Below, piece after piece: positions 16,248-32,311 of a DNA stretch of 64,000 bases. The stretch is taken from IMG/VR virus record IMGVR_UViG_3300022602_000024, positions 290,430-354,429 of that record. One strand, 5' to 3'. The notes under the pieces are model-generated. The model was not told the origin of the DNA, did not search any database, and worked only from the letters and a program-made list of their open reading frames with translations. A program made the position numbers and the translations under genes. Every line of letters starts with the position of its first letter. Position 1 is the first letter of the stretch.

Positions 16248-16254
16248 ACTAACC

Positions 16255-16330
16255 TGGTGGTAATAAGTAGAATCGAACTACTGACAGGCGGCGTATGAAG
16301 CCACTGCTCTACCAACTGAGTTAACGATCC
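16255..16330 (-). pseudogene. chimeric/defective tRNA with CAU anticodon
   Basis: D, anticodon and T arms pair; the acceptor stem GGATCGT/TATTACC pairs at only 2 of 7 positions. Confidence 0.75.
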
Positions 16331-24641: not shown

Positions 24642-25583
24642 TCAAAGTTCTGCTACAAGATTTTGAATAATTTTTTTGCAAGGAAGAACTTCGGTTACTT
24701 TATCAATGGAATGCCCGGCATATATATGTCCTTGATCCGTATCTTCTTTCCAAAGTCCGTACTTTAAACTTTCAGTATGATTTACATTATCAGTGCCTTG
24801 AAACTCTTTGAACTTCAAAGCAGTTTGTTTCCTTACTACTTCTGTGTCTCCGTTACGGCGAAACGTGTGGTTAAACTCAGAAAGGTCTTCCTTCTTGGCA
24901 TTTATTACTGCCAACTTGGTTGCTTGCTTGATTGGGCTTTCTGCAGACAATGCCAGAAGAGTGCCAACTGCAACTATTTCTGCTCCAAGATCAATATATT
25001 CTTTAACTTGTTCCGGCGTCCCAACACCGCCATATGGTACTAAATATGCATCCGGGGTTAATTCTTTTTGTGCAAGGAATAACTCTTTAACTGGTGTATA
25101 TCCAGAAAATCCAGCCGATTCAAGGCCTTTGATGCAAAATCCATCAATGAAATGTTTATCAGCAGTTGCTTTGTCCATTGGCTCGTAGATTCTTCTAAAT
25201 ATCTTTACCCCTGCTTCGTGTATTGGTTGCAACCATTCAATGACTGTAGCATCAGGTATATCGTCTTTTGCTGGGGCACTATTAGAGTTACCATAGACAA
25301 TTTCCATGGTAGGAAATGCATTTTTAATAACTATGTCCCGGCAGGCTTTGGCACTGTAGATAGAACGTATTTCAAAGTTACAATGTAATCTATTAGATTT
25401 AGTAAACTTCATGAACATGTCAATGTCTTTTTGCAGTTGGTCGAAGTTGGTGCCGTACGCCCATGAACTTAGACTAGCGTAGCCGCCGGCTCGGTGAACT
25501 GCTATAGCCAGCTGTAGACTGGAACCTTGGTTCATACATGCTTCAAGGATAGGATGTTGAGATTTGAATATTTGTTGTGCCAT
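24642..25583 (-). CDS. nitronate monooxygenase/FabK-like FMN TIM-barrel protein; start revised to MAQQIF
   Basis: HPILEACM, LAIAVHRAGG, GLESAG, YGGVG, GA..VAVGT..SAES; the longer ORF-track start runs through tRNA-fMet. Confidence 0.8.
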   Translation of the reverse strand: MAQQIFKSQHPILEACMNQGSSLQLAIAVHRAGGYASLSSWAYGTNFDQLQKDIDMFMKFTKSNRLHCNFEIRSIYSAKACRDIVIKNAFPTMEIVYGNSNSAPAKDDIPDATVIEWLQPIHEAGVKIFRRIYEPMDKATADKHFIDGFCIKGLESAGFSGYTPVKELFLAQKELTPDAYLVPYGGVGTPEQVKEYIDLGAEIVAVGTLLALSAESPIKQATKLAVINAKKEDLSEFNHTFRRNGDTEVVRKQTALKFKEFQGTDNVNHTESLKYGLWKEDTDQGHIYAGHSIDKVTEVLPCKKIIQNLVAEL

Positions 25584-25630
25584 ACTGATATTTATTTGAA
25601 TAGATCCATGGCAAAAATTACCTATCGGGT

Positions 25631-25991: not shown

Positions 25992-26621
25992 TTATTTGAC
26001 TATTACAAATGTTGTAAAACACCAATTGGCATTGGCGATGTATACTTCTGAAAATCCAATGCTTTGGAATTTTTTAGTATACCAATCTACAGATTCTGGA
26101 AACATGACTCCTACCAAGGAATCTGCTTTTTCTTTGATTTCTTTTCTGCTGACACCATGTTTGAATTTGTATTCATGATACTGCTCTAGTGCCAAACCTG
26201 AATTTTCTGTCTTTTCTGACAATATCAAAAAAGCACCAGGCAACATTGCATTATATACACTTGTCAAATAAGATTCTTTATCTTGTATAAAATGCAAAGT
26301 CCAATTACACAATACTGCTGAAAATTTTACCGCAGTGTCAGGAAACTCACTAGTGCAATAATATGTGGCATAGTTGGGCGGGCATTTTGCCAGCATGTCT
26401 TGACTATTATCCACTGCATGTATATTAGCGAAACCAGCAGAGTGTAATCTGTTAACAGTCTCACCAATGGCACACCCAATTTCCAATATGGGATCAGAGT
26501 GTTGTAACTTTTGTTTACAAAAATCAACTGACAACTCTAACACACGATCGTAATCGGGTATATGTTGCCTTGCATGTTGATTAAACAACTCTGCTATGGT
26601 GTTGTTGAATTTCCATTCCAT
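25992..26621 (-). CDS. CmoA-like SAM-dependent enzyme
   Basis: W.F...A..F...IPDY, EIGCAIG, VDNS..M, NWTLHF, LILSEK, K...G.S..EI..K collinear with CmoA. Confidence 0.85.
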   Translation of the reverse strand: MEWKFNNTIAELFNQHARQHIPDYDRVLELSVDFCKQKLQHSDPILEIGCAIGETVNRLHSAGFANIHAVDNSQDMLAKCPPNYATYYCTSEFPDTAVKFSAVLCNWTLHFIQDKESYLTSVYNAMLPGAFLILSEKTENSGLALEQYHEYKFKHGVSRKEIKEKADSLVGVMFPESVDWYTKKFQSIGFSEVYIANANWCFTTFVIVK

Positions 26622-27436
26622 ATGATTACATTTTCTTGAGTTAAATCCTGGCTGATCGGTTGAGGAAAGAATTTTGCCATATATCTATTATGATTTTTAA
26701 TATCATAGTAATACGGTAATTCTGTTTCTGCTTGACTGTATAAACTATCATCATATCCAAAATTATTTTGTTTCATCAACAAGATCAATGCAGATAAACT
26801 TACAATACTTGCAGTAATACGTATGCTGCCTTTTTCAGACACACCTTGCATACGAATACGTTCGCTAGGTTGTATAATACTTAAAGTTTTGCTCACTGCC
26901 GATCTTTGTTCATCTGTGGCATTGGGAAATAATCTCCGATACCCATTGAATGGATGTACTGTGTCAATGATAATTGTTTCTTTGGCTAATCCAGCTATTT
27001 TGCGTACAAAATCAAAACTATCAAATACTGCATACAGCATGCCACTGGCAATTACAATGTCAAAATGTTGATCGCTTGTGTAATCAGCAAAACTTGATTG
27101 GACAATATTGTATTGCCCAGGATCATAATACTTTTTGAATAGTTGTTCGCTGGGCAATGAATAACGTTCTAGTTGTTCTATCCCAGTGTAATGGCGAGCA
27201 CCATTTGCCAAACACCATGCACCGGTTGCTCCCATACAGCTACCTATATCCAGTACTGTTTTATCTTTAATCAAATCTGGCGGCAACATAACACGATGCC
27301 TATTGAACATAAATTCTGGATTTATGTTGTAACTAAGACTTGGCCCAGATTTGCCTGGACTAGGTACTATTACTTTCCTACCTATTCTATCATCAGTTAA
27401 AACCCAATCTGGTTGTGTTTCAAAAATGTTTATCAT
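26594..27436 (-). CDS. class I methyltransferase, CmoB-like motifs
   Basis: KTVLDIGS..G, GA...TGIE, FDIVIASGMLY. Confidence 0.65.
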   Translation of the reverse strand: MINIFETQPDWVLTDDRIGRKVIVPSPGKSGPSLSYNINPEFMFNRHRVMLPPDLIKDKTVLDIGSCMGATGAWCLANGARHYTGIEQLERYSLPSEQLFKKYYDPGQYNIVQSSFADYTSDQHFDIVIASGMLYAVFDSFDFVRKIAGLAKETIIIDTVHPFNGYRRLFPNATDEQRSAVSKTLSIIQPSERIRMQGVSEKGSIRITASIVSLSALILLMKQNNFGYDDSLYSQAETELPYYYDIKNHNRYMAKFFPQPISQDLTQENVIIWNGNSTTP

Positions 27437-27477: not shown

Positions 27478-27608
27478 ACCATATAGAAACACACTCGGCC
27501 ACGCTCTGAACCTGGACTCTTAGTAATGTGTTTTTATGTGGTGGACGCCTAGATACTATCAACGCCCTGGGATTGTTAGCTACCACAGGACCGAGCCTGA
27601 ACAATCTC
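27478..27608 (-). ncRNA. structured intergenic RNA(s), including an Ala-type microhelix ending in ACCA
   Basis: GATTGTT/AACAATC stem, GGGCGTT..GGCGTCC-ACCA, then an 18-nt imperfect inverted repeat. Confidence 0.45.
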
Positions 27609-27619
27609 TTTACTAAACT

Positions 27620-27716: not shown

Positions 27717-27792
27717 TGGTACATCGTACGAGATTCGAACTCGTGTACCCGCCGTGAAAGGGCGGTGTCCTAGGCCTCTAGACGAACGATGC
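27717..27792 (-). tRNA. tRNA-Glu(UUC)
   Basis: Cloverleaf, TTC anticodon, CCA. Confidence 0.96.
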
Positions 27793-27797
27793 ATATT

Positions 27798-27925
27798 TGG
27801 CGCTCTACAGGATTCTCACCTGCTCACTGAAGACCCCTATAGCGGGGTTTTTATCTCTCTACTGCCATGAGTTGCGAACTCACCGTAGAACCCGAGTTGC
27901 GAACTCGGCGTGGAAATATCAGAGC
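27798..27925 (-). ncRNA. tRNA-like ncRNA (128 nt) with a T-arm and GCCA end but a non-tRNA interior
   Basis: GCTCT/AGAGC acceptor-like stem, GCAGG-TGAGAAT-CCTGT arm, two GAGTTCGCAACTC hairpins. Confidence 0.7.
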
Positions 27926-27932
27926 ATAAACT

Positions 27933-28007
27933 TGGCGGTCCCAAGGAGAATCGAACTCCTATCAACGGCGTGACAAGCCGCTATACTAACCATTATACTA
28001 TGAGACC
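27933..28007 (-). tRNA. tRNA-Asp(GUC)
   Basis: Cloverleaf, GTC anticodon, CCA. Confidence 0.95.
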
Positions 28008-28010
28008 AAA

Positions 28011-28268
28011 ACTATATTAAAATATACTACAGGAATACATGTATTGTATTTAAAGACATCTCTTCTCTTACGCAACACACACATTACAGTCAGAATAGTC
28101 CACCTCGCCGCGATCTTTTTCGCGTTTCCCTTTGCTTGTTACGGCCTAGGTATACGTGCATTGTAACTGTACAACCCTGTGATGTCTCACATATTATGGA
28201 CGAAACCGGACGTCGATAGCTGTACAGTACCTAGTGGTCTGATAACCTGCAGTACATTTTAATATAGT
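28011..28268 (-). ncRNA. unassigned ~258-nt structured ncRNA
   Basis: 23-bp closing stem with 2 G-U pairs on the minus strand; nested helices and a potential pseudoknot. Confidence 0.7.
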
Positions 28269-28343
28269 ATGTGGGCATCGAGTGCTTTTGTTTAATAGTA
28301 AGGGCATCTCCCTTACTACCCACAATACTATATTAAATTTAAC

Positions 28344-28374
28344 TTTTTAAAGAACAAGTGTTAATTTCTTAACA
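28344..28374 (-). promoter_or_regulatory. boxB-like hairpin plus boxA (Nus antitermination site)
   Basis: TGTTAA-GAAA-TTAACA hairpin, then TGTTCTTTAAAAA, just after a promoter. Confidence 0.65.
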
Positions 28375-28381
28375 TGTATGT

Positions 28382-28410
28382 ATTGTAGCACTAGTTGAAT
28401 TAAGTGCCAA
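28382..28410 (-). promoter_or_regulatory. sigma70-type promoter for the ncRNA/tRNA array
   Basis: TTGGCA-17nt-TACAAT with TG extension. Confidence 0.65.
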
Positions 28411-28432
28411 ATACGGTGTTGTTTTTATGCAA

Positions 28433-29087: not shown

Positions 29088-29216
29088 TTAAATGACTTCG
29101 TATTCGTCTTTACCGCAACCACATTCGGGACACAAAAAGTCCTCGGCTAGATCTTCCCATTTGCCTTCTAAGATTTCATCGTGGACATGTCCACAAACTA
29201 CGCATACGTGATCCAT
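29088..29216 (-). CDS. rubredoxin (42 aa); not in ORF track
   Basis: MDHVCVVCGHV...WEDLAEDFLCPECGCGK; TAATG coupling to rubrerythrin. Confidence 0.92.
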   Translation of the reverse strand: MDHVCVVCGHVHDEILEGKWEDLAEDFLCPECGCGKDEYEVI

Positions 29217-29665
29217 TATAGTGCCTCCAATTTTGCTTGATATGCTTCAGCATGACGCTTTTCAATTTTGGCCAATGCTGCAAAACGCTTTTCTGCTTTG
29301 GCTAGAATAGCCGCAAATTGTTCTGCGTGCTCTTTGCTTTCGGCGATTTGCTCGGCGGCTTCGTAAGCCGCTGCAGTATTGCCTTCATCTTCAGCTTGTG
29401 CTTTGAATTCAGGATACATTGTAGTGAATTCATAAACTTCGCCTTCAATGGCTTTTTGCAAACATTCAGCAGTACTGGGCTTGCCAATCAGCAATTCTAA
29501 ATGCCCCCAAGCGTGTAACAACTCTTGATTAGCAGTATGCTCAAAATGTTGTGCAATATCTTCGTGACCCTCTTCTCGGGCAATTTTTGCAAAATAACGG
29601 TATTTTGTGTGAGCCTGTGACTCGCCAGCAAATGCCGCTTCTAAGTTTTTAATAGTAATGCTCAT
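29216..29665 (-). CDS. rubrerythrin
   Basis: NLEAAFAGESQA, E..H, EGE.YE...MYP.F, E..H di-iron motifs. Confidence 0.95.
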   Translation of the reverse strand: MSITIKNLEAAFAGESQAHTKYRYFAKIAREEGHEDIAQHFEHTANQELLHAWGHLELLIGKPSTAECLQKAIEGEVYEFTTMYPEFKAQAEDEGNTAAAYEAAEQIAESKEHAEQFAAILAKAEKRFAALAKIEKRHAEAYQAKLEAL

Positions 29666-31555: not shown

Positions 31556-32311
31556 TTAGTTGCTGATCTTATATAAGTTCTTATCAAACCAACATACAAC
31601 TAAATCTTCCAACCGTGCATAGCCGTATTTGTTTAGACTATCCTTTAGACTATCATTAATTAAGTTACGATCTGCTAAATCATGCCAACTTGCGTGGTTG
31701 GGCAAGGGATCGTGTTCGCTAGCATAAACGCCAGCATATAGCCAAGGGCTATTTTCTTTGCGGTAAAAGTAAGCATCTCTACAGTCAAATCCCGATATAG
31801 CCAACATATACATCAAATTCAGTATGTTATAGCTGTAGTACTGCTGACTATGATTTGTTACTACTAACCGATTATTGTACATATATGTAGTCTGCGGTAT
31901 ACTCAATATCAACATACCATTTACATTTAATGTTTGTTTCCACAGAGCTAGGCACTTAAAAGGATCACGTGCATATTGAAAAGTATCATGACTCCAAATC
32001 AAATCAACTCGACGTCCAATAGGAACTTCTTCAAAGTTAACTTTAACAGGAACAATATTGGGACTACCGGCTAAAATCTCTGGCTCAATTTGATCTACTT
32101 TTTGATCTACTGCATAAACTTTGTAGTTGTGGGGCAGTGGTGGATCATCTCTTGTATACAAGTTGGCCCACCATTCTGCATCCATACCTGCACCACAACC
32201 CATGTCAGCAATAGAACTCAAGTTGTCCAGGAAACTATCGTACCCGTACAATACATTTAAGATTTCCAAACTGTGCTGATGACTATCATATGCGTTTTTA
32301 AACAGTGCCAT
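31556..32311 (-). CDS. class I SAM-dependent methyltransferase
   Basis: ADMGCGAG, VDLIWSHD, L..NGML. Confidence 0.8.
   Translation of the reverse strand: MALFKNAYDSHQHSLEILNVLYGYDSFLDNLSSIADMGCGAGMDAEWWANLYTRDDPPLPHNYKVYAVDQKVDQIEPEILAGSPNIVPVKVNFEEVPIGRRVDLIWSHDTFQYARDPFKCLALWKQTLNVNGMLILSIPQTTYMYNNRLVVTNHSQQYYSYNILNLMYMLAISGFDCRDAYFYRKENSPWLYAGVYASEHDPLPNHASWHDLADRNLINDSLKDSLNKYGYARLEDLVVCWFDKNLYKISN

What the first reader, a model, noticed from the sequence alone, without database searches (positions are those of the whole stretch)
27798..27925. tRNA mimic with a CCA end and duplicated T-loop-like hairpins
Seen: spaced like a tRNA gene between tRNA-Asp and tRNA-Glu. It has a 5-bp acceptor-like stem, G discriminator, CCA and a T-arm. 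The D and anticodon arms are replaced by two copies of GAG-TTCGCAA-CTC hairpins and a CCCC/GGGG hairpin. Established: T4 encodes CCA-ended non-tRNA stable RNAs in its tRNA cluster. Inference: processed by RNase P, and may act as a decoy for tRNases or RelA or as a Y-RNA-like adaptor.
Basis: partly seen in the sequence, partly recalled or inferred. Interest (0 to 1): 0.68.

Follow-up and report, generated by a model that had tools for sequence, protein, structure and literature searches.

The report
Armless tRNA mimic in phage arrays
A 128-base gene sitting among a giant freshwater phage's tRNA genes encodes a conserved, tRNA-shaped RNA with no D arm that displays two copies of one invariant seven-base loop. 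It belongs to a family I could not find described anywhere, and it more likely imitates a tRNA than decodes codons.

Summary
On the minus strand at 27798-27925, 7 nt after tRNA-Asp and 5 nt before tRNA-Glu, lies a 128-nt element. It has a 5-bp acceptor-like stem, a G discriminator, an encoded CCA, a T-like arm, two hairpins with the loop UUCGCAA, and a CCCC/GGGG hairpin. ARAGORN and Rfam do not call it.

It is not a decayed tRNA. I found 12 distinct long forms (127-134 nt) and 9 distinct minimal forms (67-69 nt) in freshwater phage contigs, nearly all in tRNA arrays. Every helix covaries: 99-100% of cells are paired, 9 pairs in each set show double changes, and 0 of 500 shuffles reach that.

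The minimal form has the layout of a D-armless tRNA with one UUCGCAA loop. The window's copy is that frame with the central arm expanded into a three-way junction. The loop is invariant in every hairpin of every member.

There is no homologue in GenBank phages or in 185,579 prokaryote genomes, and no Rfam family matches. T4 RNAC and RNAD are analogous in placement but unrelated in sequence.

Expression could not be tested. The function is inferred: a non-decoding tRNA mimic, matured like a tRNA, that acts through its loop.

The parts
27798..27925 (-). Whole 128-nt tRNA-like RNA gene (long form of the family)
   Evidence: Full-length match to model R1 (169 bits). Homologues score 95-166 bits in 11 other distinct variants.
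27926..27932 (-). 5' leader/spacer AGUUUAU after the CCA of tRNA-Asp
   Evidence: GUUUAU (in some loci GUUUUAU) directly precedes the element in every family locus, including those with no tRNA upstream. U is at -1 and G at +1, as for most tRNAs of the array.
27921..27925 (-). Acceptor-like stem, 5' strand (RNA positions 1-5)
   Evidence: Pairs with 27802-27806. Pairs 2 and 3 show double compensatory changes; 96% of cells are paired in the long forms and 100% in the minimal forms.
27909..27920 (-). Connector GAUAUUUCCACG that replaces the D arm (positions 6-17)
   Evidence: UCCACG is invariant in all 21 variants. CAC (positions 14-16) can pair with GUG (99-101), but both are invariant, so this cannot be tested.
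27892..27908 (-). Hairpin H1: 5-bp stem plus loop UUCGCAA (positions 18-34)
   Evidence: The stem covaries (CCGAG/CUCGG, CCAAG/CUUGG, CAAAG/CUUUG and others) while the loop is invariant.
27858..27889 (-). Central arm: helix P (positions 37-41 with 64-68), internal loop G/GGCA, and hairpin H2 with loop UUCGCAA (positions 43-59)
   Evidence: P and H2 covary: U-A to C-G in P; G-C to A-U and G.U/A-U/G-C in H2. The G/GGCA loop and the heptaloop are invariant and are shared with the minimal forms.
27830..27857 (-). Arm D/H3: helix GAGA/UCUU (positions 69-72 with 93-96), a UAAAAA bulge, and the hairpin CCCC-GCUAUA-GGGG (positions 79-92)
   Evidence: D is paired in 11 of 11 variants through one-sided changes. 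H3 shows a C-G to U-A exchange and, unlike H1 and H2, has a variable loop.
27824..27829 (-). Junction CAGUGA (positions 97-102)
   Evidence: CAGUG is invariant in all long and minimal forms; the next base is A except C in L149.
27807..27823 (-). T-like arm: 5-bp stem plus 7-nt loop UGAGAAU (positions 103-119)
   Evidence: The stem covaries (C-G, U-A, A-U; G.U, A-U, G-C). The loop varies but keeps U at positions 1 and 7 and A at position 5, the places of T54, A58 and U60.
27802..27806 (-). Acceptor-like stem, 3' strand (positions 120-124)
   Evidence: See the 5' strand entry.
27798..27801 (-). Discriminator G plus encoded CCA
   Evidence: 20 of the 21 variants end in GCCA (16) or ACCA (4); L149 ends GCCC. 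All 20 tRNAs checked in the array encode CCA.
27933..28007 (-). tRNA-Asp(GUC), upstream neighbour
   Evidence: ARAGORN and Rfam, 64 bits. tRNA-Asp precedes the element, directly or after an inserted non-tRNA segment, in most family loci.
27717..27792 (-). tRNA-Glu(UUC), downstream neighbour
   Evidence: ARAGORN and Rfam. The downstream neighbour differs between phages: Glu, Cys, Lys, Leu or Phe.

Best explanation
This is a real RNA gene of a previously undescribed family of phage tRNA mimics.

The family's basic form is 67-69 nt and has these parts:
- a short (4-5 bp) acceptor stem with an R-CCA end;
- a single-stranded connector in place of the D arm;
- a central arm ending in the invariant anticodon-type heptaloop UUCGCAA;
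- a T-like arm.

The window's 128-nt copy is the same frame with the central arm enlarged into a three-way junction. That junction carries two copies of the loop plus a variable hairpin.

Shown here: the anatomy, strong purifying selection on the RNA structure, placement and spacing like a tRNA gene, and the invariance of the loop.

Inferred:
(i) It is transcribed with the tRNA array and cut out by the tRNA-processing enzymes, with RNase P cleaving at G+1 and the 3' end formed at the encoded CCA.
(ii) It does not decode. It acts as a stable tRNA look-alike whose loop (one or two copies) is the working part. The loop would occupy or titrate a factor that normally handles tRNA anticodon arms or tRNA ends. 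The candidate I favour is a host tRNA-targeting defence or toxin enzyme.

My odds for each layer: real structured RNA family 0.93; tRNA-type maturation 0.7; mimic or decoy function acting through the loop about 0.35.
For: Anatomy at the stated coordinates.

Homologues: there are 12 distinct long and 9 distinct minimal variants, drawn from at least 18 metagenome datasets. Model R1 scores them 95-169 bits and model R2 scores them 67-100 bits. R2 aligns end to end with a long form (54.8 bits), which shows that a long form is a minimal form plus two insertions.

Covariation: in the minimal forms 100% of 161 cells are paired and 9 of 18 pairs show double changes. In the long forms 99.4% of 330 cells are paired and 9 of 30 pairs show double changes. 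In both sets 0 of 500 shuffles reach these values, and slid controls give only 27-62% pairing. RNAalifold on an independent MAFFT alignment recovers the same helices. The comparative structure is paired in 100% of cells, against 92.6% for pairs found only in the RNAfold minimum-energy structure, and that alternative fails exactly where the sequences vary.

Conservation: the element is 79-91% identical between phages whose flanking tRNAs are 61-92% identical.

tRNA-like handling: it has 4-8-nt spacers to neighbouring tRNAs on the same strand, a conserved GUUUAU leader, U at -1, G at +1 and an encoded CCA, as all 20 tRNAs checked do. A 12/12 sigma-70 promoter lies upstream where the element sits outside an array.

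Loop as the working part: UUCGCAA is invariant in every hairpin of all 21 variants while the stems change. A frame-only pattern search found no member with a different loop. In the long forms the loop is duplicated.

Against decoding: ARAGORN in bacterial mode and Rfam's tRNA model reject it. The branched 128-nt form is not tRNA-shaped. There is no G3.U70 pair. GCG is the phage's rarest Ala codon, at 5.9%.

Context: phage tRNAs are now viewed as counter-measures to host tRNases (PMC10264068, PMC11555353). Synthetic mimics of the acceptor stem and tail are cut by a tRNA-tail nuclease (PMC12851939).
Against: There is no expression or end-mapping data. No RNA run holds the phage, so a discrete CCA-ended RNA is inferred and not seen.

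No partner is identified. No protein gene is consistently linked to the element, and no known anticodon nuclease is known to me to target a CGC or Ala-type loop.

The acceptor stem is short and has a 0-2-nt linker to the T-like stem in different variants. Stacking like a true acceptor/T helix, and efficient RNase P recognition, are therefore not assured.

The loop's invariance would fit base-pairing to an RNA target equally well.

The alignments used for the pair counts were fitted to the models, which favours the structure. One search is the check that does not depend on the models.
Confidence: 0.5

Rival explanations
1. RNA-pairing sponge or regulator. The U-turn-type loop (YUNR start, then CGCAA) makes a kissing contact with a complementary RNA loop. 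The most obvious partner is the anticodon loop CUACGAA of tRNA-Arg(ACG/ICG), which allows up to 6 pairs once A34 is inosine. The RNA would thereby hold or sense that RNA, and the two loops of the long form would add avidity.
For: The loop is invariant and fits a pairing-competent anticodon-like geometry. tRNA-Arg(ACG) genes in family loci have the loop CUACGAA, complementary to UUCGCA except at A34 before deamination. Stem sequence is free to vary, as expected if only the loop is read.
Against: The window's phage has no tRNA-Arg(ACG), so the target would have to be a host tRNA, and other family phages' own Arg tRNA would be caught too. No conserved complement (UUGCG/UGCGAA) is present in the co-transcribed upstream RNA regions. 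UUGCGAA is not enriched in the genome: 15 observed against about 22 expected. A seven-base loop contains many possible 'codons', so the match has little specificity.
Confidence: 0.12
2. Processing punctuation. This is a tRNA-like signal (like plant mitochondrial t-elements or MALAT1's mascRNA) whose only job is to recruit RNase P and 3' exonucleases, so that neighbouring transcripts get defined ends. One such transcript is the conserved noncoding RNA upstream.
For: In L139-L141 and L145 the minimal form directly follows a conserved noncoding region of about 230 nt, with no tRNA in between; in L139-L141 a consensus sigma-70 promoter precedes that region. The acceptor stem, T-like arm and CCA are the features such signals need.
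Against: A pure cleavage signal does not need an invariant central loop, an invariant G/GGCA internal loop or an invariant connector, and it does not need a duplicated loop. Inside arrays the flanking real tRNAs already supply such cuts.
Confidence: 0.12
3. A working but non-canonical tRNA. This would be a D-armless tRNA with anticodon CGC that is charged (by a host or phage enzyme) and then used either on the ribosome for GCG codons or as an aminoacyl donor for a non-ribosomal transferase.
For: ARAGORN in mitochondrial mode calls two minimal forms as D-armless tRNA-Ala(cgc). The loop obeys the anticodon-loop rule and differs by one base from the tRNA-Ala(UGC) loops of the related phage loci. 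The central arm (3 bp, internal loop, 5 bp) is roughly as long as a stacked D/anticodon helix. The CCA is encoded.
Against: There is no G3.U70 Ala identity pair, and pair 3-70 varies between C-G and U-A. The acceptor stem has only 4-5 bp. The T-like loop lacks the U55-C56 equivalent. The 127-134-nt forms carry two extra arms. GCG is the phage's rarest Ala codon and tRNA-Ala(UGC) is present. As far as I know, D-armless tRNAs function only with specialised mitochondrial factors.
Confidence: 0.08
4. No function: a decayed tRNA gene, a spacer with chance hairpins, or a short protein-coding frame.
For: tRNA finders reject it. A mismatched, apparently decayed tRNA-Met-like gene does exist elsewhere in the array at 16248-16323.
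Against: It is conserved in 21 variants with compensatory changes in every helix. It is as conserved as, or more conserved than, neighbouring true tRNAs. Indels of 1-6 nt between variants destroy any reading frame. There is no terminator-type U tract.
Confidence: 0.03

Closest known systems
Phage T4 RNAC (species 1, 139 nt) and RNAD (species 2, 119 nt)
   Same: They are small non-tRNA RNA genes inside a phage tRNA cluster, on the tRNA strand, and 1-6 nt from their neighbours. They are of similar size. RNAC has a T arm next to a terminal stem, and RNAD has an encoded ...CACCA end. Their biological role is unknown (PMC3014915, PMC9697503).
   Different: There is no sequence or structure similarity: model R1 scores at most 9 bits on the T4 region. 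T4 RNAC has a canonical UUCGAAU T loop. Neither T4 RNA has the UUCGCAA loop, the G/GGCA internal loop or the UCCACG connector. The T4 RNAs are experimentally detected; this one is not.
D-armless (mitochondrial-type) tRNAs
   Same: The minimal forms have the same layout: acceptor, single-stranded connector, 5-bp stem with a 7-nt Y-U-NNN-R-N loop, short variable stretch, T arm. ARAGORN -mt calls two of them.
   Different: This is a bacterial-virus context. The acceptor has 4-5 bp, not 7. The central arm is extended by a conserved internal loop. The same 'anticodon' appears in every member. Long forms have branched arms. There is no evidence of charging.
tRNA-like processing signals (plant mitochondrial t-elements; mascRNA at the MALAT1 3' end)
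   Same: They are tRNA-shaped units that are not tRNAs, are recognised by tRNA-end-processing enzymes, and can sit at the 3' end of another noncoding RNA, as in L139-L141.
   Different: Those signals are not known (from memory) to need a sequence-invariant central loop. Here the loop, the connector and the internal loop are the most conserved parts.
tmRNA tRNA-like domain and bacterial Y-RNA-like YrlA
   Same: These are tRNA mimics with an acceptor-type and a T-type arm and a reduced or absent D arm. Related phages do carry tmRNAs.
   Different: There is no G3.U70, no tag reading frame conserved across indels, and no ARAGORN tmRNA call. There is no Rfam tmRNA or YrlA match. The element is 67-134 nt, and its own two ends form the acceptor stem.
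Phage tRNAs as counter-defence, and phage RNA decoys such as pseudo-ToxI repeats
   Same: This gives the functional context for a tRNA look-alike in a phage tRNA array (PMC10264068, PMC11555353). Duplication of the active unit in the long form is reminiscent of repeat expansion in RNA decoys (that comparison is from memory).
   Different: Those tRNAs are canonical and decode. No target enzyme is known for this element.

Membership tests
Canonical bacterial/phage tRNA (Rfam RF00005) | Cloverleaf with D arm, 7-bp acceptor and T loop UUCRANY; detected by ARAGORN or the Rfam tRNA model | tested here: not met
   Not called by ARAGORN in bacterial mode. No RF00005 match even at E<=10 on the long or minimal form. 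No D arm, a 4-5-bp acceptor, and a T-like loop UGAGAAU.
Canonical bacterial/phage tRNA (Rfam RF00005) | Placed and flanked like the array's tRNA genes (same strand, few-nt spacers, encoded CCA) | tested here: met
   Spacers are 7 and 5 nt; CCA is encoded as in 20 of 20 tRNAs checked.
T4 RNAC/RNAD small stable RNAs | Non-tRNA RNA gene embedded in a phage tRNA cluster with tRNA-like ends | tested here: met
T4 RNAC/RNAD small stable RNAs | Sequence/structure homology to the T4 genes | tested here: not met
   Model R1 with filters off on the T4 tRNA region gives a best score of 9 bits, E 0.2. Rfam has no family for these RNAs.
T4 RNAC/RNAD small stable RNAs | Accumulates as a discrete stable RNA during infection | not testable with these tools
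   No RNA run holds the phage.
D-armless tRNA | Acceptor, connector, anticodon arm (5 bp + 7 nt), T arm | tested here: inconclusive
   ARAGORN -mt of 5 minimal forms tested as mtRNA-Ala(cgc) but not the window's long form. The acceptor has only 4-5 Watson-Crick pairs.
D-armless tRNA | Aminoacylated and used in decoding | not testable with these tools
   Needs biochemistry. Indirect signs are against it: no Ala identity pair, branched long forms, and GCG at 5.9% of Ala codons.
tmRNA | tRNA-like domain with G3.U70 plus a tag-encoding frame | tested here: not met
   Pair 3-70 is U-A or C-G. No frame survives the indels between variants. No ARAGORN or Rfam tmRNA call.
YrlA / bacterial Y RNA | Match to the Rfam model; terminal Ro-binding stem enclosing a tRNA-like module | tested here: not met
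   No Rfam match at E<=10. The termini form an acceptor stem with a free CCA.
RNase P substrate (tRNA-like) | Acceptor-type helix with a 3' RCCA, G+1 and U-1, stacked on a T-type arm | tested here: inconclusive
   The sequence features are present. The linker between the T-like stem and the acceptor is 0-2 nt in different variants. Cleavage itself was not tested.

The most novel reading that the evidence does not exclude
A phage-encoded, D-armless tRNA decoy. The RNA is cut out of the tRNA array by RNase P, is never charged, and neutralises a host tRNA-targeting immune effector or toxin (an anticodon-arm or CCA-tail enzyme) by offering a tRNA-like frame with the invariant UUCGCAA loop. The long form would have doubled the loop to raise potency. 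That would be a new class of RNA-based anti-defence, and it might give a first handle on why phages such as T4 keep non-tRNA RNAs in their tRNA clusters.
Probability: 0.25. Interest if true: 0.85.

Novelty: new variant of a known kind. Interest (0 to 1): 0.68.

Why it matters
Non-tRNA RNAs inside phage tRNA clusters have been known since T4's RNAC and RNAD, and they are still unexplained. This is a second, unrelated family of that kind, and it has properties that make the question testable:
- It has two size classes that share one frame.
- Every helix is supported by covariation.
- It has a single invariant loop that can be mutated, and a duplicated-loop version for dose tests.

It also bears on how phage tRNA arrays are now viewed, as counter-measures to host enzymes that cut or modify tRNAs. 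In addition, it shows that standard tRNA and Rfam scans leave conserved RNA genes unannotated in large phage genomes.

Tried and rejected
- GenBank phages: blastn (distant mode) with the element and with two minimal forms found no homologue.
- Prokaryote genomes: a frame-plus-loop pattern gave 0 matches in 185,579 genomes, so a host original that the phage copies was not found.
- Rfam: no match at the gathering threshold or at E<=10 on the window, a minimal form or the upstream regions.
- T4 homology: rejected.
- RNAfold's minimum-energy structure, which pairs H1 with H2: rejected by covariation.
- Members with another loop: a pattern that fixes only the frame found 10 loci already known to carry a family member, all with UUCGCAA, and 6 chance hits that the model rejects.
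- Loop complement in the co-transcribed upstream RNA or enriched in the genome: not found.
- A protein gene consistently linked to the element: none found. The neighbouring methyltransferase genes are not linked to tRNAs in more distant relatives.
- tRNA repair or CCA-adding genes in the phage (PolyA_pol, RNA_ligase, RtcB): none found.
- Expression: 20 DNA runs from 19 freshwater studies hold at least part of the region, 8 of them half or more of it, and no RNA run does. Read laying was therefore not used, because contigs of DNA runs cannot show RNA ends.
- Distant relatives found through the methyltransferase (288-kb and smaller records) lack the element with both models.
- No protein fold or complex job was warranted.

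Full report
**Context.** The window is the last 64 kb of a 354-kb IMG/VR phage record that CheckV estimates to be 98% complete. The record's DNA recurs in 20 freshwater or lake metagenome runs from 19 studies. All 21 tRNA genes of the genome lie in the window on the minus strand.

**Checking the observation.** Reading the minus strand gives this order: tRNA-Asp ending with CCA at 27933, the spacer AGUUUAU, a 128-nt unit at 27925-27798, the spacer AAUAU, then tRNA-Glu. The unit has:
- a 5-bp terminal stem GCUCU/AGAGC, followed by G and CCA;
- a 5-bp arm with a 7-nt loop next to the 3' strand of that stem;
- two hairpins with the loop UUCGCAA;
- a CCCC/GGGG hairpin.

So the description and the coordinates are exact. 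ARAGORN and Rfam do not call it, even at E<=10. All 20 tRNAs checked in the array encode CCA and most have U at -1, as the unit does.

**Relatives.** An exact-pattern scan of viral contigs found a copy in a 95.7-kb contig (L059), again right after tRNA-Asp. Compensatory changes were already visible by eye. I then built a covariance model from the window copy (R1) and ran further pattern scans of viral and metagenome contigs. Together these gave 12 distinct long forms of 127-134 nt, scoring 95-169 bits.

The last scan also revealed a second size class. There are nine distinct forms of 67-69 nt, which I modelled as R2. R2 aligns end to end with a long form (54.8 bits). Comparing the sequences shows that the long form is a minimal form with two insertions:
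- about 25 nt after the conserved CCACG, which adds an extra UUCGCAA hairpin;
- about 35 nt after GGCAGU, which adds the D/H3 arm.

One contig (L127) carries a minimal and a long form in tandem, 7 nt apart. L040 has a long form at the locus where L139-L141 and L145 have a minimal form. The element is single-copy in the five other records searched whole, including a complete 150-kb genome with terminal repeats.

**Structure.** In the minimal forms, 100% of 161 cells are paired and 9 of 18 pairs show changes on both sides. No shuffle out of 500 reaches this, and sliding the partners drops pairing to 31-57%. In the long forms the figures are 99.4% of 330 cells and 9 of 30 pairs, again with 0 of 500 shuffles.

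Those alignments were fitted to the models, so I also ran RNAalifold on a plain MAFFT alignment. It recovers the acceptor stem, the central hairpin and the T-like arm, with 9 compensatory pairs.

For the window copy the comparative structure is as follows (RNA positions; window coordinate = 27926 minus position):

| Helix | Positions |
|---|---|
| Acceptor | 1-5 with 120-124 |
| H1 | 18-22 with 30-34 |
| P | 37-41 with 64-68 |
| H2 | 43-47 with 55-59 |
| D | 69-72 with 93-96 |
| H3 | 79-82 with 89-92 |
| T-like | 103-107 with 115-119 |

A possible closing helix, 14-16 with 99-101, is invariant and so cannot be tested. This structure is paired in every one of 11 variants. The RNAfold minimum-energy alternative, which pairs H1 with H2, fails exactly where the sequences vary (92.6% paired).

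**What is conserved.** The stems drift. These parts do not change in any of the 21 variants:
- the heptaloop UUCGCAA, in every hairpin that carries it;
- the connector UCCACG;
- the internal loop G/GGCA;
- the junction CAGUG (followed by A in all but one variant).

The T-like loop varies (UGAGAAU, UGAAACU, UGCAAAU, UGAGACU, UUAAAUU) but keeps U at positions 1 and 7 and A at position 5. The H3 loop is free to vary.

A pattern that fixes only the frame and leaves the loop open found no member with a different loop. Between phages the element is 79-91% identical, while the flanking tRNAs Asp, Glu and Tyr are 61-92% identical. Indels of 1-6 nt between variants rule out a coding frame.

**Reading the anatomy.** The minimal form has the layout of a D-armless tRNA. 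ARAGORN in mitochondrial mode calls two of the minimal forms tRNA-Ala(cgc).

The repeated loop is not a T loop, because it has no A at the A58 position. It fits the anticodon-loop rule and differs by one base from the UUUGCAA loop of the tRNA-Ala(UGC) genes in the related phage loci.

Several things argue against decoding:
- There is no G3.U70 pair.
- The acceptor has only 4-5 pairs.
- The long form is branched.
- GCG is the rarest Ala codon of the phage, at 5.9%.

Duplication of the loop in the long form suggests that the loop itself is the working part and that more copies help.

**Placement.** The element is always on the tRNA strand and always preceded by GUUUAU. It usually comes right after tRNA-Asp, or after tRNA-Asp plus an inserted non-tRNA segment of about 113 nt. 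It is followed 4-8 nt later by a tRNA that differs between phages: Glu, Cys, Lys, Leu or Phe.

In L139-L141 and L145 it lies outside any array. In L139-L141 it sits at the end of a conserved noncoding region of about 230 nt that starts at a 12/12 sigma-70 promoter.

These facts support co-transcription with tRNAs and tRNA-type end processing. That step remains an inference, because no RNA data set holds the phage.

**Comparison with known families.** T4's RNAC and RNAD are the nearest analogues in kind. They are small RNAs in the tRNA cluster with tRNA-like ends, and their role is unknown (PMC3014915, PMC9697503). They share no similarity with this family, and Rfam has no model for them.

tmRNA, YrlA and canonical tRNA membership all fail on tested features. 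There is no homologue in GenBank phages or in 185,579 prokaryote genomes.

**Mechanism.** I commit to this reading: a stable, non-decoding tRNA mimic, matured like a tRNA, that acts through its invariant loop. It most likely occupies a factor that handles tRNA anticodon arms or tRNA ends. The context makes this plausible. Phage tRNA arrays are thought to counter host tRNases (PMC10264068, PMC11555353), and simple mimics of the acceptor stem and tail are substrates of a tRNA-tail nuclease (PMC12851939).

The rivals are loop-loop pairing with an RNA such as tRNA-Arg(ICG), pure processing punctuation, a real but odd tRNA, and no function. The last is contradicted by the covariation. The others are kept at low odds, for the reasons given in their entries.

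**Limits.** There is no expression evidence and no partner, and the host is unknown. Homologues were found by exact patterns and then confirmed with models, so more divergent members, perhaps with other loops, may exist. The phage itself encodes no CCA-adding enzyme, RNA ligase or RtcB.

Noticed in passing
window 16248-16323 (-): A tRNA-Met(CAU)-like gene lies next to tRNA-Gln. It has normal D, anticodon and T arms and ends in CCACCA, but its acceptor strands (GGAUCGU / UAUUACC) do not pair. Rfam gives only a partial hit (32.4 bits, model positions 8-63) and ARAGORN skips it. It is either a decayed tRNA or another non-canonical one.
   Followed up: partly
window ~28008-28420 (-); L141:11115-11342; L140:2933-3180 (-); L139:629-880 (-); L040:3300-3648; gaps upstream of Tyr/Asp in L059, L117, L126, L127, L142, L147: A conserved noncoding region of about 230-400 nt precedes the (Tyr-)Asp-element block in most family loci, with mosaic similarity between loci. 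In L139-L141 it runs from a perfect sigma-70 promoter to the minimal element. There is no Rfam match. It is possibly another unannotated structured RNA linked to the element.
   Followed up: partly
L132:3746-3835; L120:~90-180; L127:~915-1000; L121:~1-114; L090:10280-10391: A third conserved element of about 90 nt sits between tRNA-Asp and the tRNA mimic. It is closed by a stem that changes compensatorily (AUGUGUG/CACACAU versus UUAGUG/CACUAA). It is absent from the window.
   Followed up: partly
window 28251-28344: A long near-perfect inverted repeat of about 94 nt lies upstream of tRNA-Asp. It draws spurious microRNA-model hits on both strands and sits just downstream of a promoter-like site at 28410-28382.
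   Followed up: no
window 27520-27619 (-) and L059:6290-6388: The segment after tRNA-Tyr (containing ...GGUAGCUAACAAUCCCAGGG... and ending GGCGUCCACCA) appears to have an inverted homologue just upstream of tRNA-Tyr in L059. This was judged by eye only. Its fold is not better than shuffles.
   Followed up: no
L008:2959-3315, L009:2959-3315, L010:3538-3915, L011:3538-3915: More distant relatives, found through the methyltransferase at window 25992-26621, carry permuted (two-piece type) tmRNA genes with tags ANDSVYALAA and ANDEQFALAA. They have no tRNAs near that gene.
   Followed up: no
window 25992-26621, 26594-27436, 31556-32311 (all -); also 24642-25628, 29216-29665: Three SAM-methyltransferase-like genes are interleaved with the tRNA array; one of them matches a PHROG annotated as tRNA methyltransferase. 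Also interleaved are a nitronate-monooxygenase-like gene and a rubrerythrin-like gene.
   Followed up: partly
L127:1039-1107 and 1115-1244: A minimal and a long form of the family stand in tandem in one phage, separated by the same AGUUUAT spacer. The two size classes therefore coexist and may have distinct roles.
   Followed up: partly
minimal forms, RNA positions 7, 42 and 58: Position 58 can pair with position 42 (outer T-stem pair) or with position 7, and positions 7 and 42 change together (G...G against A...A). This leaves open an alternative 7/4 acceptor/T arrangement with a purine-purine mismatch at 6x59.
   Followed up: no
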